This document shows positions 4,067 through 61,578 of a DNA stretch of 64,000 nt, one piece after another (within the stretch, counting starts at the first letter, position 1; the number at the start of each line of letters is the position of its first letter). The notes under the pieces were generated by a model. The model saw nothing but the letters and a program-made list of their open reading frames with translations. It ran no database searches and was not told the origin of the DNA. The DNA is taken from assembly GCA_976226885.1 (NCBI GenBank), contig OZ320323.1:29140001-29204000 (forward strand), given 5' to 3'. Made by a program: the position numbers and the translations under genes. Source of the DNA: Iphione sp. A-MEVVRFRX5 (taxonomy: Eukaryota).

Positions 4067-4215
4067 NNNNNNNNNNNNNNNNNNNNNNNNNNNNNNNNNN
4101 NNNNNNNNNNNNNNNNNNNNNNNNNNNNNNNNNNNNNNNNNNNNNNNNNNNNNNNNNNNNNNNNNNNNNNNNNNNNNNNNNNNNNNNNNNNNNNNNNNNN
4201 NNNNNNNNNNNNNNN
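4067..4215. other. Assembly gap (N run)
   Basis: Run of N in the sequence. Confidence 1.
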
Positions 4216-5944: not shown

Positions 5945-35274
<29,330 letters not shown>

Positions 35275-37414: not shown

Positions 37415-40400
37415 TCATTTCTGCAAAGATGCTATCGTAATGGAGTCCAAATGGAGGGGATTGCAGGGTGGAGGGCTGCGTTTTGCAGCCCGTCTATGCA
37501 TAAGGATAGGTTTTATGACTGACAAATGACCACAGTTTGCAAAAATTACCTCCGAAGTAGTGACTACAGCATAATTAAAGAGAATCTAGCACCCTATGGT
37601 TTGTTCCTCCAACTTCAGGTACGACACAAAAAAAGTAACACATCGACATCAAAGCACTGCCAACACATAGACCCCCCTTCTTGCATCCAAGCGCAATGCA
37701 GTCAGCATTCATCCACTGTTACTAGGACTCATGTCCACAAGCGCGGAATAACAGAAGCGGCAGCAAGGCAGATTAGGAGGGAGGTAGTTTGTATACGATT
37801 CCCACTCTTCACACGTTAGAAAAGCGTTTGTCAGTTGCACCTGTTTTCTGTGTAACTGACTCCAAATCTAAGAAGCACCAATCATTTCATTCATTCTTCC
37901 CAAGTGTAGCACGCCGGCTAGTGCTATTAGTGAAAAGCAGAACTACCATCATGACGCTGTTCTGCTCAGAAGGTGAAAAGCATAACCACACACATTCAAT
38001 GTCTTAGCCACTGAAAATTACTGGACAATGATGTTACTTCTTTCAGTCATTGTGCCCAAATTATAACGCACGTAAAATAAAGGATAGCAATGAAAATGCG
38101 CTGGACAGGGAGGGGATCAGAGATGTGAAAAGGAACTGGAGGATGACAGCAACAGCAGGGGAGACATGATAGGTCTGGGCAAGGGTACAGACAGAAATAG
38201 GATGCAGGGTACGAGGCAACAGGATGTCAAGACAGAAGGACAGAAATGGAAATGAACAATGGTAGCAGGTCTGGACAAGGGTAGAGAAGAAATAGGGCCA
38301 CAACAGGACAGATTTGGAAACAAAGGGAGGGAGATATCGAGAGACACATGAATGATGTAAGATGAGGATATTATTCCATCAATGAAGAATAAATTACGAA
38401 ACGGTTAGAGCACTGTTTTTTGTTGTTTGTTTTTTAATACGACACAATGGCAAAGACATCGAATTCAGGAAACATCTTCGGCTTAACTCACATACTTACG
38501 CCACAAGCCCGATGCATATGATGAATTTATCTTCCCTGAAAAGTATTGTGTTAAATATACTGGATACGGCACACAAGATAGATCAACCTGCGTTCACACA
38601 TGTACCTTGTCCTCTACATGTATATAATAAAAACAGAAATGGGAAATATGAAATTCGTTGGCAATAACACAATAAAGGAGATGAAGGACAAGGGAAAGTA
38701 AAACAGACAGGAAATCAGAGTGAGTGAGACCGTCTATGAGAGTGTGGGGGAGAGACTAGGTGATGGAGCTGTCAATTTTATATGACGTCGTATTTGAATT
38801 CAACATGACTACCTGATTATACTTTTCATCCGAAAACTCTACACTGGTCAATGTGGAAAAAAAACCCACGATGGTTTCTGCATTCTTTTCTAAATCACAA
38901 CAACGTAGTCCCCAATACGATAAGCAATCCTGACCTAAGATAAACAACTACTACTGCACACTAATGAATCCAAATCATAATGTCTCCACCCACCTTCTTG
39001 CCAGCTGCGCCGACCTTCGCCTTCGCTGTTCCCCGGACTTTCTTTTGCCTGTTTTTGCGTTCCTTACGTTGCTTTCGCGATGCCCGCTTGATCTCCATCA
39101 GGCCGTGCTGAAACGGGGAGGTGGAAATACATATGGAAATACATATGACTACAATATATCATTTTAGACTCACCTCAGAACGATCCTTAACAGGGAAAAG
39201 GTATAGAGGAGGAAGAAACTAGTACTTGCTACTCTCATCAACACAGAGCTGCAGGAAAACCCATGCAGGTGACACGAGAACAAAGATATAACAACGCAAC
39301 AACGCCGTCTTCATCTTGTCCCTTACATTTGCTATTTGTTTACATGTTAAAACTATATGAAGGATGTCACAATCTTAATACCAGGATACATCCCAAATCA
39401 GTGAATATATCCAACGATGCGATAATTGCTTTTTTCTGTAGCACTGAAATTTCGACCACAAAAGGGGACCACACACCCCGCAGGGAGATACCACAGTGCA
39501 CATATTTTCTTCTGAATTATTTTTCTTAGAACACTGCTACATCCTTTATCCCTCCTCTCTACACACACCCAGTAAAAGATATACTCGTCTATCCAACTCT
39601 TACTTTAAGAAATTAAGAAAACATAAAACGACAGAATTAGCAAACAAGTGGCCACAATGGTGTATCAGATATGGAAAAATCAATGCAGGTCCAGTCACCC
39701 CCATTCGACAGCTGGTTTGTGTCCCTGTCACCAGCCCTCATCTTTGTAGTTCAACCGGTTCCAGTTACACTTACAGTAACCAAGTGTTTCACCAAAGCCA
39801 GTCCTTTAAGCCAGTCTTCAGAATATCAAGTAAATACTAAATTTCAAGCTCTACAGTGGGCACTACCTGTGAGAGGTAGCTTATTCCTTTACTTCAAATT
39901 ATGGGCTTGCCTCTCAGATAAAACGGGCCTACTGAGCTCATTTATAAGGTAACCAATACAAATGAGACTACAAGGCTTCCTCTACCTGTAACAAATCCGT
40001 AGATTACATTAATTTACCAATGAAATGTGATCATGACTTTGTACCAGCGGGTATTTGCCACCTGGACCACCTCTGGGAGACACCTGGTGTCTGCCAATGA
40101 CAGAAGTCCATGTGTATATAAAAGCTGTAAATATTCTACAACTCTTGTCTTGTCTATCACTCCATATGGAGTAAGTTGTCTACATTCTAAAAGTTCAGGT
40201 CACTTCAAACCTATCTGAGAGATGTCCCAACCTTAATACCAGGATATATCACAAATCAGTGAATATATCCAACGATGCGATAATTGCTTTTTTCTGTAGC
40301 ACTGAAATTTCGACCACAAAAGGGGACCACACACCCCGCAGGGAGATACCACAGTGCACATATTTTCTTCTGAATTATTTTTCTTAGAACACTGCTACAT

Positions 40401-43400
40401 CCTTTATCCCTCCTCTCTACACACACCCAGTAAAAGATATACTCGTCTATCCAACTCTTACTTTAAGAAATTAAGAAAACATAAAACGACAGAATTAGCA
40501 AACAAGTGGCCACAATGGTGTATCAGATATGGAAAAATCAATGCAGGTCCAGTCACCCCCATTCGACAGCTGGTTTGTGTCCCTGTCACCAGCCCTCATC
40601 TTTGTAGTTCAACCGGTCCCAATTACACTTACAGTAACCAAGTGTTTCACCAAAGCCAGTCCTTTTGGCCAGTCTTCAGAATATCAAGTAAATACTAAAT
40701 TTCAAGCTCTACAGTGGGCACTACCTGTGAGAGGTAGCTTATTCCTTTACTTCAAATTATGGGCTTGCCTCTCAGATAAAACGGGCCTACTGAGCTCATT
40801 TATAAGGTAACCAATACAAATATGACTACAAGGCTTCCTCTACCTGTAACAAATCCGTAGATTACATTAATTTACCAATGAAATGTGATCATGACTTTGT
40901 ACCAGCGGGTATTTGCCACCTGGACCACCTCTGGGAGACACCTGGTGTCTGCCAATGACAGAAGTCCATGTGTATATAAAAGCTGTAAATATTCTACAAC
41001 TCTTGTCTTGTCTATCACTCCATATGGAGTAAGTTGTCTACATTCTAAAAGTTCAGGTCGCTACAAACCTATCTGAGAGATGTCCCAACCTTAATACCAG
41101 GATATATCACAAATCAGTGAATATATCCAACGATGCGATAATTGCTTTTTTCTGTAGCACTGAAATTTCGACCACAAAAGGGGACCACACACCCCGCAGG
41201 GAGATACCACAGTGCACATATTTTCTTCTGAATTATTTTTCTTAGAACACTGCTACATCCTTTATCCCTCCTCTCTACACACACCCAGTAAAAGATATAC
41301 TCGTCTATCCAACTCTTACTTTAAGAAATTAAGAAAACATAAAACGACAGAATTAGCAAACAAGTGGCCACAATGGTGTATCAGATATGGAAAAATCAAT
41401 GCAGGTCCAGTCACCCCCATTCGACAGCTGGTTTGTGTCCCTGTCACCAGCCCTCATCTTTGTAGTTCAACCGGTCCCAATTACACTTACAGTAACCAAG
41501 TGTTTCACCAAAGCCAGTCCTTTTGGCCAGTCTTCAGAATATCAAGTAAATACTAAATTTCAAGCTCTACAGTGGGCACTACCTGTGAGAGGTAGCTTAT
41601 TCCTTTACTTCAAATTATGGGCTTGCCTCTCAGATAAAACGGGCCTACTGAGCTCATTTATAAGGTAACCAATACAAATATGACTACAAGGCTTCCTCTA
41701 CCTGTAACAAATCCGTAGATTACATTAATTTACCAATGAAATGTGATCATGACTTTGTACCAGCGGGTATTTGCCACCTGGACCACCTCTGGGAGACACC
41801 TGGTGTCTGCCAATGACAGAAGTCCATGTGTATATAAAAGCTGTAAATATTCTACAACTCTTGTCTTGTCTATCACTCCATATGGAGTAAGTTGTCTACA
41901 TTCTAAAAGTTCAGGTCGCTTCAAACCTATCTGAGAGATGTCCCAACCTTAATACCAAGATATATCACAAATCAGTGAATATATCCAACGATGCGATAAT
42001 TGCTTTTTTCTGTAGCACTGAAATTTCGACCACAAAAGGGGACTACTCACCCCATGGGGAGATACCACAGTGCAGATCATTACTCCCAAATAGACATAGA
42101 TGGACTTTTCAAAACACTAGTGCATACATGAATTTGCTATTTACTTCTACCACCAATGTAAAAGAACGGACACAAACAGAATAGGGTAAAGTAAACACGG
42201 CCCTTATGGTGATACCACAGTACATTCAAGTATAATATGGCCTAATACCCCATCTTGAACAAAGGAAATGTACAGTGAAATTCAATTACATGCCCGGATG
42301 CGCGGTCGTAGCAACATACCATCCACTAGTTAACAAATTTAGCATTTCATAAACAATCTTCCGGTATTTTTCCTGTTGTTCTATAATCCCCCTCTTAAAG
42401 AAACACAAACGTCAAGTCGTATGGGATGCAACACACTGATTAGCAGGAACAAGACTATTTACAGACATGCAACTTCTGTCGGATACGACGAGTGGTTTGT
42501 CCAACTCAAGCCCATGCCCTCTGTCTCCACAATCATTTTTTAGCCTCCTACATAATATACACTACCCTATGTAACCCCCCCCTTGCATTCATGTTTCTAG
42601 ATGCCAGCCACACACCCCGAACGAGTTAATGCAAAAGGCAGACTTACCCTGACAAGTCTGTATTTGGGCTCCAGCTTCTTGGCCTGGTCTAGATTGTCAT
42701 AAATTAGAGCAAATCCAATGGTCTTGCCACCTCCAAACTGTGTACGGAATCCAAAGCAGAAGACTACATCTGGTGTGGTCTTGTACATGCGTGCCAGCTT
42801 CTCACGGACTTCTGTCTTGGGCACAGTGGCACGTCCAGGATGCAGGACATCGACGACCTGGTAGACATCATTAATACGTCAAATGAGCTTGGGAGGGTGC
42901 TATCAAACAGGCCCGTTACTTTCAGTTCAGTTAAATTCAAATGTCTACATTTAAAAAAAAAACTGCAATTCGCATAGTACCTTGTGTAATTACTACAAAA
43001 TTCATACATGCTTGAAATTATTATTTATATTTGTTTCTATAATATGAATCACAGTATTGCAAACAGATACTGGTTGCCACTTGAGAGACCCGGCATTTGC
43101 AAGGAAAAAAGCAGAATGCATACTGTACTACAAATTGCTAACTACTTCTCAGATGACTTCCATTCAAAACTACTTTTACTTGACATATCCTCAAGGTAAT
43201 TGCTAGAAATAGTCCAATTGGTCGCATAGAGGAGATGGATATATGGATTATTTTGTCCCCATCGACAGAAAACAACAGAGACTGAATATACCCACAAGAA
43301 GATCATGGGTAGGCTTCTGTCTTCGACTGCCAAAGGAGGTAGAATGCTTTTACACACCAATGACTCAAGCACTTCCGATGGTACAACCGTTAAAGTTGCT

Positions 43401-44253
43401 GGACTTCTATCGCCAGAACAAGCAGACAGACTGGTCCCAGAAGTGGATCTAAGGGATGTGTATTGTATATTCAAACATTCCTCTAAAAATTACCTTACGG
43501 AATAGCTGTTCCCATGGACGGCTCCTTTGATTCTAAATATACATCAAGCTCTATCAAAAAATTCCTCAATTACCGTATATACCATCATTTTCAATATTAT
43601 CACGGGAAAATATGTCATCACTGATTTAAGAGTAAAATAAATAAGGTAAGCCATTCAGACGTGGGTTTAAATGCACTTGAATTCGTCATACCATCTGCTT
43701 CCTGCTTAACAGACGATTTGTCAGGAATTTCCTGGTGCGCAAGGTTACGACTCCCTCGCTCTGAAATAAAGAAAAGGGCACAATGTGCAAGAAAAATTGA
43801 ACGCACACCAAAAGTTGCAGCACATATACATGGGCATACAACGGACCGGAGTTGGGAGCATTAACACATGTAACCTGTCGTCACTGTCTTGTCAGTTCTA
43901 AAATGTTGGTCTCTGTTCGTCCGTCTACGATACACAATCTTGACTGCTATTGAATCTTTCTTTTATTTCAATCCGTATGAAATATTTTTTAGTAATGACC
44001 ACTACCATATCCCTAGACTATCATCCCTTGCTTCTTGACAGCGTGCTGAACCGATGAGGGTCCGTCAAACTAGTATGGAGTCGCCTTGTTTACGTTCAGT
44101 TTCGAGGCCAAATAATGGACCCATGAACCAAAATCTTAACATAAAGTCCTTTGCTATATACCATAATTTGTCAATCGGGAACATCTAAGGCTCGATGAAA
44201 AGTTAAGGATCGGATACAGGCAGATAATTGAAGCAAAGTCTGAAACCTACCAT
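37415..44253 (-). CDS. RPS24: 40S ribosomal protein S24 (eS24)
   Basis: ATG-only exon at 44253-44251 (donor gtaggt). Exon 43760-43692 ([23 protein letters not shown]), exon 42857-42648 ([46 protein letters not shown]...RLVR), exon 39107-38994 ([38 protein letters not shown]). The terminal exon is inferred at 37420 (AAA TGA), or alternatively 38535-38500 (GGA AGA TAA). Confidence 0.95.
39362..39500 (-). ncRNA. SNORA8: H/ACA snoRNA, SNORA8/ACA8-like, copy 1 (3'-most in the transcript)
   Basis: Minus strand reads: hairpin CACTG...CAGTG, H box ACAGAA, hairpin CAAT...ATTG with upper stem GGATATA/TGTATCC, then ACA 3 nt from the end. Pockets TGGTATCT/TCG and GCATCGTT/TGGT complement the conserved 18S segments CGA-UC-AGAUACCG and ACCA-UA-AACGAUGC. 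In copies 2-4 both pockets are 16 nt from their box. Confidence 0.85.
40220..40358 (-). ncRNA. SNORA8: H/ACA snoRNA, SNORA8-like, copy 2
   Basis: Same boxes and guide pockets as copy 1, offset by 858 bp. Confidence 0.85.
41078..41216 (-). ncRNA. SNORA8: H/ACA snoRNA, SNORA8-like, copy 3
   Basis: Same boxes and guide pockets, offset by 1716 bp. Confidence 0.85.
41936..42074 (-). ncRNA. SNORA8: H/ACA snoRNA, SNORA8-like, copy 4 (5'-most in the transcript; variant 5' hairpin)
   Basis: Same boxes and pockets. The 5' hairpin reads CCCCATGGGGTGAGTAGTCCCC, keeping the GGGG/CCCC stem while the loop differs. Confidence 0.85.
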
Positions 44254-44263
44254 GGTTGCGGCT

Positions 44264-44308
44264 CAAGATGGCGCTGAAAAAGGCCGGAAAGGACGATGTC
44301 TCGCGAGA
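44264..44308 (-). promoter_or_regulatory. RPS24 core promoter: TCT/5'TOP initiator, YY1-type site and TCTCGCGAGA palindrome
   Basis: Minus-strand cCTTTCC at 44292-44286 fits YC(+1)TYTYY and is followed by a pyrimidine tract. CAAGATGGCG at 44264-44273. TCTCGCGAGA at 44299-44308. Confidence 0.75.

Positions 44309-47082: not shown

Positions 47083-61578
<14,496 letters not shown>

What the first reader, a model, noticed from the sequence alone, without database searches (positions are those of the whole stretch)
39362..42074. Possible ~2.7-kb H/ACA-capped sno-lncRNA (SLERT-like) from the RPS24 intron
Established: when one intron holds two snoRNAs, exonucleolytic trimming can stop at the outer snoRNPs and leave a stable lncRNA. 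Examples are the C/D sno-lncRNAs of the Prader-Willi locus and the H/ACA-ended SLERT from TBRG4, which acts on Pol I transcription. Seen: copy 4 would cap the 5' end and copy 1 the 3' end. Between them lie two more H/ACA modules and three structured spacers, each with hairpins TGGAC...GTCCA and ACAACT...AGTTGT. Inference: a multivalent nucleolar RNA whose output is tied to RPS24 transcription, and RPS24 is itself required for 18S maturation.
Basis: inference. Interest (0 to 1): 0.75.

Follow-up and report, generated by a model that had tools for sequence, protein, structure and literature searches.

The report
Tandem snoRNA gene array in RPS24 intron
One intron of the ribosomal-protein gene RPS24 carries four tandem copies of a real, conserved H/ACA guide RNA, an arrangement shared by two related species; whether the four stay joined as one 2.7-kb RNA could not be tested, and the comparative evidence points to ordinary small guide RNAs as the selected product.

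Summary
Intron 3 of a minus-strand RPS24 gene (42647-39108) contains an 858-bp unit repeated about 3.15 times. This gives four intact 139-nt H/ACA modules, with outer ends exactly at 42074 and 39362.

The modules are genuine snoRNAs:
- A covariance model finds 6, 7 and 8 copies in the same RPS24 intron of two related species.
- 20 of 27 base pairs show compensatory changes.
- The invariant pocket strands complement two neighbouring 18S rRNA segments.
- The closest family is SNORA8, but the score is below Rfam's threshold.

The sno-lncRNA reading could not be tested, because no RNA run was listed for this DNA. Indirect evidence leans against a spacer-dependent, SLERT-like function:
- Spacers share no similarity between species.
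- Within the relatives, spacers have decayed to about 55-65% identity while every module, inner ones included, stays 95-100% identical.
- The spacer hairpins fold no better than shuffled sequence.

My best reading is a recently expanded intronic H/ACA gene cluster, a layout already known from Drosophila and rice, with long multi-module RNAs as processing intermediates.

First-reader notes exist on this same stretch. A three-snoRNA intron (eIF3b) was noted on another piece of this genome.

The parts
41936..42074 (-). H/ACA snoRNA copy 4. It is 5'-most in the transcript and is the outer paralog, with its own hairpin-1 apex.
   Evidence: Model R1 scores 130.6 bits, E = 1e-31. H box, ACA box and stems read.
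41078..41216 (-). H/ACA snoRNA copy 3. Inner copy, identical to copy 2.
   Evidence: R1 scores 136 bits. Its 5' hairpin matches copy 1 and its 3' hairpin matches copy 4.
40220..40358 (-). H/ACA snoRNA copy 2. Inner copy.
   Evidence: R1 scores 136 bits.
39362..39500 (-). H/ACA snoRNA copy 1. It is 3'-most and is the outer paralog, with its own hairpin-2 changes, which keep pairing.
   Evidence: R1 scores 132.6 bits. Fold.
41217..41935 (-). Spacer 1 (719 nt), between copies 4 and 3.
   Evidence: 99.0-99.9% identical to the other two spacers and has no match in relatives' spacers. Fold z = -1.5.
40359..41077 (-). Spacer 2 (719 nt).
39501..40219 (-). Spacer 3 (719 nt). It carries the few unit-specific substitutions.
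39108..42647 (-). RPS24 intron 3 (3540 nt), which holds the whole array. The array lies 573 nt from the 5' splice site to the first module and 254 nt from the last module to the 3' splice site.
   Evidence: GTAAGT at 42647 and TTTCAG ending at 39108. Exons placed by translation and Pfam PF01282 hits.
42648..42857 (-). RPS24 exon 3.
   Evidence: The ORF search gave 1212 Ribosomal_S24e hits. Sequence.
38994..39107 (-). RPS24 exon 4.
   Evidence: Translation [38 protein letters not shown]. tblastn matches in relatives.
43252..43462 (-). SNORA53 in RPS24 intron 2. It is a second intron-hosted H/ACA snoRNA of the same gene.
   Evidence: Rfam RF00563 scores 71.4 bits against a gathering score of 38.

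Best explanation
This is an intronic tandem cluster of genes for one H/ACA pseudouridylation guide snoRNA (SNORA8-like), hosted in intron 3 of RPS24.

In this species an older pair of paralogs (copies 4 and 1, 92.5% identical, one 719-nt spacer apart) was recently expanded to four copies. The expansion came from unequal crossing-over within the snoRNA sequence, so the inner copies are copy-1/copy-4 chimeras and the spacers are 99-99.9% identical.

The array is transcribed as part of the RPS24 pre-mRNA and spliced out. Each module assembles a dyskerin-type snoRNP. The selected products are the roughly 139-nt snoRNAs, whose two pockets pair with neighbouring 18S rRNA segments (...CGA-UC-AGAUACCG... 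and ...ACCA-UA-AACGAUGC...).

Releasing the inner copies requires at least one endonucleolytic cut per spacer, followed by exonucleolytic trimming. Multi-module RNAs of about 1.0, 1.85 and 2.7 kb are therefore expected as intermediates.

Shown here: the gene structure, the array, the reality and conservation of the snoRNA, the constraint on every module, and the lack of constraint on spacers. Inferred: expression, snoRNP assembly, the rRNA targets, and the cleavage step.
For: 1. The snoRNA is real. Model R1 finds 4 copies here and 6, 7 and 8 copies in loci L001, L002 and L003. On the wider family alignment, 93.9% of cells are paired, against 34-43% when the partners are slid. 20 of 27 pairs have compensatory changes, and 0 of 500 shuffles reach the covariation score (narrower set).

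2. The location is shared. In L001-L003 all copies lie between RPS24 exons 3 and 4.

3. The guide strands are invariant. GGUAUCU, GCAUCGUUGG and CUGGU are unchanged across species while the stems change. Both pockets sit 16 nt from their H or ACA box. Their complements occur about 20 nt apart in 18S rRNA (strings confirmed in PMC8125830 appendix E and the 18S primer in PMC11311268).

4. Modules are constrained and spacers are not. In L001 and L002 module pairs are 95-100% identical while most 150-nt flanks are 52-66% identical. There is no spacer similarity between species at E <= 1.

5. The inner copies are chimeric and the spacers are near-identical. In one sample, two contigs carry 7 and 8 copies (L002 and L003), which shows ongoing unequal exchange.

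6. There is precedent. Intronic snoRNA gene clusters are described in rice and Drosophila (PMC2780460; Huang 2004 and 2005 as cited in PMC2246290).
Against: There are no RNA data of any kind: no run was listed.

In mammals, an intron with two snoRNAs yields a stable sno-lncRNA by exonucleolytic trimming alone (PMC11028025, PMC5054931). No spacer-cleaving endonuclease is established for animal intronic clusters.

Homogeneity of the modules could also come from gene conversion rather than from selection on released monomers.

The hairpin-1 target pairing is weak on one side (2-3 bp).

Rfam's SNORA8 model does not reach its threshold.
Confidence: 0.6

Rival explanations
1. After splicing and debranching, exonucleases stop at the outer snoRNPs. 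A stable 2.7-kb RNA with H/ACA ends and two internal snoRNPs (possibly also 1.0- and 1.85-kb forms) accumulates in the nucleolus and acts as a multivalent, SLERT-like regulator coupled to RPS24 transcription.
For: The prerequisite is met: four intact snoRNAs lie in one intron in the sense orientation. The trimming mechanism is established in mammals and works with H/ACA ends (PMC11028025, PMC5054931). Among the RPS24 loci sampled, arrays of 4-8 modules occur and no single-copy state was seen. That pattern would fit selection on valency.
Against: Spacers are unconserved between species. They decay within arrays and fold no better than shuffled sequence. A spacer-borne function such as SLERT's DDX21-binding internal sequence is therefore unlikely.

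The strictly conserved parts are the rRNA-complementary pocket strands, as expected for working guide snoRNAs.

Drosophila and rice intronic clusters are a described gene layout for snoRNAs.

No RNA evidence could be obtained.
Confidence: 0.2
2. Each unit is an independent transcription unit with its own promoter in the spacer, as for many nematode and plant snoRNAs. The intronic position would then be irrelevant to processing.
For: The unit (spacer plus snoRNA) is duplicated as a whole. The sequence just upstream of the inner copies is A-rich.
Against: The 5'-most copy has a different upstream sequence. The sequences upstream of the copies in L001, L002 and L003 share no motif with the window or with each other. 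All copies in all three species are in the sense orientation inside the same host intron. No T-run terminator follows the ACA box.
Confidence: 0.05
3. The copy number is an assembly artefact: a two-copy locus mis-expanded, or a larger array collapsed, in a near-identical 858-bp repeat.
For: The units are 99-99.9% identical. Repeats of this kind are error-prone in assembly.
Against: Unit-specific substitutions distinguish the three units, and the outer snoRNA copies are distinct paralogs. Independent long-read contigs of two related species show arrays of 6-8 copies at the same place.
Confidence: 0.05

Closest known systems
Intronic snoRNA gene clusters of Drosophila melanogaster (box H/ACA) and rice
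   Same: Several snoRNA genes, often isoforms of one snoRNA, lie in tandem inside a single intron of a host gene, here a ribosomal-protein gene. The arrays arise by local duplication.
   Different: This is a different phylum, host gene and snoRNA family. The array here is very young (99% identical units). It is shared, with different copy numbers, by three related species. Processing is unstudied in both this case and in those clusters' animal examples, as far as the papers I could read show.
SNORA8 (ACA8), Rfam RF00393
   Same: Both have a two-hairpin H/ACA architecture of about 139 nt and start UGCACUG. The Rfam consensus shares the pocket elements GGUA.CU, GCAUC.UUGG and CCUGGUAUU.
   Different: Scores are below Rfam's gathering threshold: 22.6 bits against 38 for the metagenome homolog L053, and no hit at E <= 10 for the window copies. 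The host gene also differs.
SLERT and the Prader-Willi sno-lncRNAs
   Same: Two or more snoRNAs share one excised intron, which is the stated prerequisite for a snoRNA-ended lncRNA. The ends here would be H/ACA, as in SLERT.
   Different: SLERT forms by exon skipping between two snoRNA-bearing introns, has two snoRNAs only, acts through its internal non-snoRNA sequence, and is human-specific. Here the intron is constitutive by sequence, there are two extra internal modules, the internal sequence is unconstrained, and no RNA has been observed.
Polycistronic snoRNA clusters of yeast and plants
   Same: Several snoRNAs come from one precursor and must be separated by cuts in the spacers.
   Different: Those clusters are mostly independent, non-intronic transcription units. 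In yeast they are cut by RNase III (Rnt1p) at spacer stem-loops (Qu et al. 1999, cited in PMC2780460). No conserved spacer stem-loop was found here.

Membership tests
Box H/ACA snoRNA | Hairpin, H box (ANANNA), hairpin, then an ACA box three nucleotides from the 3' end | tested here: met
   The H box is ACAGAA in the window and AGAGGA in the relatives. ACA is followed by 3 nt. Seen in all 25 copies of the three species.
Box H/ACA snoRNA | Helices supported by compensatory changes | tested here: met
   20 of 27 pairs have changes on both sides. 93.9% of cells are paired against 34-43% for slid partners, and 0 of 500 shuffles reach the score.
Box H/ACA snoRNA | Pseudouridylation pocket whose top lies 14-16 nt from the H or ACA box, with both strands complementary to rRNA | tested here: met
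   Both pockets are 16 nt from their box (counted). Hairpin 2 pairs 8 + 4 bp with ACCA-UA-AACGAUGC. Hairpin 1 pairs 7-8 + 2-3 bp with CGA-UC-AGAUACCG. Both are 18S strings. The hairpin-1 assignment is tentative.
Box H/ACA snoRNA | Association with dyskerin, NHP2, NOP10 and GAR1, and accumulation as a small RNA | not testable with these tools
   No RNA run was listed.
SNORA8 (RF00393) | Score at or above Rfam's gathering threshold (38 bits) | tested here: not met
   The window copies give no SNORA8 hit at E <= 10. The homolog L053 scores 22.6 bits.
SNORA8 (RF00393) | Same guide elements and hence the same target | tested here: inconclusive
   The consensus printed shares the hairpin-2 pocket strands and the 5' end. 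The human target could not be verified from the papers held.
sno-lncRNA | Two snoRNA genes within one intron | tested here: met
   Four modules lie between the splice sites at 42647 and 39108.
sno-lncRNA | A stable uncapped, non-polyadenylated RNA whose two ends are the snoRNAs | not testable with these tools
   The look-up of sequencing runs listed none, so read laying could not be run.
SLERT-like regulator | Function carried by the internal non-snoRNA sequence | tested here: inconclusive
   The internal sequence is not conserved between species, is unconstrained within arrays and is not unusually structured. SLERT itself is species-specific, so non-conservation does not exclude this.
Intronic snoRNA gene cluster | Several snoRNA genes in tandem in one intron of a host gene, in the sense orientation | tested here: met
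   Window: 4 copies. L001: 6. L002: 7. L003: 8. All lie in RPS24 intron 3.

The most novel reading that the evidence does not exclude
The 4-8-module arrays kept in RPS24 intron 3 of three species are matured as long multi-snoRNP RNAs. In this species that would be a ladder up to 2.7 kb with ends at 42074 and 39362. This would be an invertebrate H/ACA sno-lncRNA in which selection acts on the number of snoRNP modules rather than on the spacers, and whose output is tied to a 40S ribosomal-protein gene.
Probability: 0.15. Interest if true: 0.65.

Novelty: new member of a known kind. Interest (0 to 1): 0.35.

Why it matters
Animal cells are usually described as following 'one snoRNA per intron'. 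In mammals, two snoRNAs in one intron give a snoRNA-ended lncRNA.

Here a highly expressed housekeeping gene carries 4-8 intact copies of one guide in a single intron, in three related species and with copy-number differences between haplotypes. This makes it a clean natural substrate for asking how, or whether, invertebrates cut such introns apart.

It also links a 40S protein gene with a guide predicted to modify 18S rRNA. By itself, however, the layout is a known kind of gene organisation.

Tried and rejected
Looking up an ORF that overlaps a module in L001 returned only the same genomic contig. A second look-up failed on frame.

2. Rfam. Only SNORA53 in the neighbouring intron reaches threshold. 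The modules give SNORA54 at 15 bits, which I treat as noise. Metagenome homologs give nothing at gathering score.

3. A hidden cassette exon in each spacer, which would restore one snoRNA per intron. The window spacer has donor-like ACTGTAAGT and AAAGTAAGA, but no acceptor with a pyrimidine tract passed my simple filter. The relatives' spacers have no consistent splice-like sites. Rejected.

4. Transposon origin of the spacer. The only other match in the window is 29 nt. Not supported.

5. A conserved spacer hairpin as an RNase III-type site. No spacer similarity exists between species, and the fold z-scores are unremarkable.

6. Mapping the predicted sites to numbered pseudouridines in yeast or human. 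The table in PMC5699541 gives 18S Psi999/snR31, but I could not place the numbering on the sequence reliably, so no numbered site is claimed.

The three N runs (4067-4215, 15623-15750, 48942-49090) were left alone.
Full report
**What is there**

On the minus strand the window carries an RPS24 gene.
- Exon 1 ends with the ATG at 44253-44251, after a pyrimidine-rich leader.
- Exon 2 is 43760-43692. Exon 3 is 42857-42648, ending AGG|GTAAGT. Exon 4 is 39107-38994, preceded by TTTCAG.
- The exon-3 open frame, searched by reference, gave 1212 Ribosomal_S24e proteins.
- Intron 2 holds a SNORA53 at 43462-43252 (Rfam 71.4 bits).
- Intron 3 (42647-39108, 3540 nt) holds the feature in question.

**The observation**

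An 858-bp unit is repeated in register four times. The aligned units are nearly identical from the start of the snoRNA-like segment in the top copy to the end of that segment in the bottom copy.

This gives four modules of 139 nt at 42074-41936, 41216-41078, 40358-40220 and 39500-39362, with three 719-nt spacers. The finding's coordinates are exact: 42074 is the U of UGCACUG and 39362 is the third base after the last ACA box.

**The modules are real H/ACA snoRNAs**

Single-sequence folding is not distinctive (z between -0.5 and -1.0), and Rfam gives no hit at its thresholds. The comparative evidence, however, is strong.

Through the exon-3 frame I fetched RPS24 loci of related organisms from public long-read assemblies. 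Locus L001 has six matches to the module in the same intron. A covariance model built from the window and L001 copies then found seven copies in L002 and eight in L003. These are two contigs of one sample. tblastn with the window's exons, one exon at a time, places all of these copies between exons 3 and 4.

A pattern made of the two invariant blocks, scanned over metagenome contigs and filtered with the model, added fourteen or so more distant homologs.

On that wide alignment:
- 93.9% of cells are paired, against 34-43% when partners are slid.
- 20 of 27 pairs show changes on both sides.
- No shuffle out of 500 reaches the covariation score (for the three species alone).

What stays invariant is what should in a guide RNA: the pocket strands GGUAUCU, GCAUCGUUGG and CUGGU, and the boxes (ACAGAA or AGAGGA, and ACA). 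Both pockets end 16 nt before their box.

The complements of the pocket strands are ...CGA-UC-AGAUACCG... and ...ACCA-UA-AACGAUGC.... These two strings lie about 20 nt apart in eukaryotic 18S rRNA. I recalled them and then confirmed them in printed 18S sequences and an 18S primer. Hairpin 2 pairs 8 + 4 bp. Hairpin 1 pairs 7-8 bp on one side but only 2-3 bp on the other, so that second target is tentative.

The nearest Rfam family is SNORA8. A metagenome homolog aligns end to end with its model at 22.6 bits (gathering score 38), and the printed consensus shares the 5' end and the hairpin-2 pocket strands. I therefore call the RNA SNORA8-like and do not file it as a member.

**History of the array**

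Copies 4 and 1 differ from each other (92.5% identity). The two inner copies are identical and combine the 5' hairpin of copy 1 with the 3' hairpin of copy 4. The spacers are 99.0-99.9% identical.

This is the expected product of unequal exchange between the two outer paralogs of an original pair, repeated once. It agrees with an earlier first-reader note on the same stretch.

L002 and L003, from the same sample, differ by one unit (7 versus 8). Such exchange is therefore still going on in a relative.

**Distribution**

Nine further RPS24 loci were examined: L004-L009 and L130-L133. They come from seven samples. Two of them (L132, L133) share the window's neighbouring genes. None has a module within 10 kb, and their intron 3 is mostly 0.5-0.8 kb.

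The three array-bearing species are also the three closest to the window in exon-3 nucleotide identity: 84%, 82% and 82%, against 80% or less for the others. The insertion into RPS24 therefore marks a subclade. In every member sampled it is multi-copy.

In L001-L003, intron 2 also carries two SNORA53 copies. Multi-snoRNA introns seem routine in this lineage.

**What the comparison says about the sno-lncRNA idea**

When two snoRNAs share an intron, exonucleolytic trimming leaves a snoRNA-ended lncRNA, and SLERT has H/ACA ends (PMC11028025, PMC5054931). The DNA-level prerequisite is met here.

The product cannot be checked, because no sequencing run was listed for this stretch.

Three observations bear indirectly on the question:
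- Spacers of the three species share nothing detectable. Since the rest of the intron is equally unalignable, this only shows absence of constraint.
- Within the older arrays of L001 and L002, module pairs are 95-100% identical while most flanking 150-nt pairs are 52-66% identical, that is, essentially unalignable. Every module, inner ones included, is held constant while spacers drift.
- The window's spacers fold no better than shuffled sequence (z = -1.5). The named hairpins are unremarkable, or are not even used in the best fold.

A function resting on spacer sequence or structure, as in SLERT or the Prader-Willi sno-lncRNAs, is therefore unlikely. The constraint on rRNA-complementary strands points to working guide snoRNAs.

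Tandem H/ACA clusters inside single introns are a described gene layout in Drosophila and rice. This makes release of monomers the default expectation in a protostome. That step needs an endonucleolytic cut in each spacer, which nobody has shown here. Long multi-module RNAs must therefore exist at least transiently.

**Other readings**

- Independent promoters per unit are unlikely. The first copy has a different upstream sequence, and no upstream motif is shared within or between species.
- An assembly artefact is unlikely. There are unit-specific substitutions, and arrays appear independently in the relatives.
- A hidden exon in each spacer was considered and dropped.

**Verdict**

The interpretation as a stable, functional 2.7-kb sno-lncRNA is untested. 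I put stable accumulation at about 0.2 and a spacer-dependent regulatory role well below that. The best-supported reading (0.6) is a young expansion of an intronic snoRNA gene cluster, which is a new member of a known kind.

RPS24 was searched exon by exon by reference.

Noticed in passing
window 43252-43462 (-); L001 9050-9178 and 9698-9826; L002 9159-9289 and 9669-9797: SNORA53 sits in RPS24 intron 2. The window has one copy. The three relatives each have two copies in that same intron, so a second multi-snoRNA intron exists in the same gene.
   Followed up: partly
L002 10366-13227 and L003 10366-13715: Two contigs of one sample carry 7 and 8 modules, with two alternating spacer types (about 300 and about 340 nt). 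They look like haplotypes differing by one unit, with a dimeric higher-order repeat.
   Followed up: partly
L053 1659-1806 and 2258-2406 (-): A metagenome contig has two tandem homologs of the snoRNA 600 nt apart and not next to RPS24. The same metagenome also yields an RPS24 locus (L009) whose short intron 3 lacks the snoRNA. The family therefore has other hosts and duplicates in tandem elsewhere too. The host gene was not identified.
   Followed up: partly
window about 44251-44295 (-): The RPS24 leader is pyrimidine-rich (CCTTTCCGGCCTTTTTC...) and exon 1 ends exactly with the ATG, a typical ribosomal-protein gene start.
   Followed up: no
L132 5875-6003 and L133 14703-17734: Gene order around RPS24 (PARG upstream, trypsin/SRCR protease downstream) is kept in more distant relatives whose intron 3 has no snoRNA.
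   Followed up: no
window 41490 and 41319 region (spacer positions 448 and 619, repeated every 858 bp): There are donor-like motifs ACTGTAAGT and AAAGTAAGA in every spacer. No matching acceptor was found and they are not conserved in the relatives.
   Followed up: partly
window 4067-4215, 15623-15750, 48942-49090: Three runs of N (149, 128 and 149 bases). They were left as they are.
   Followed up: no
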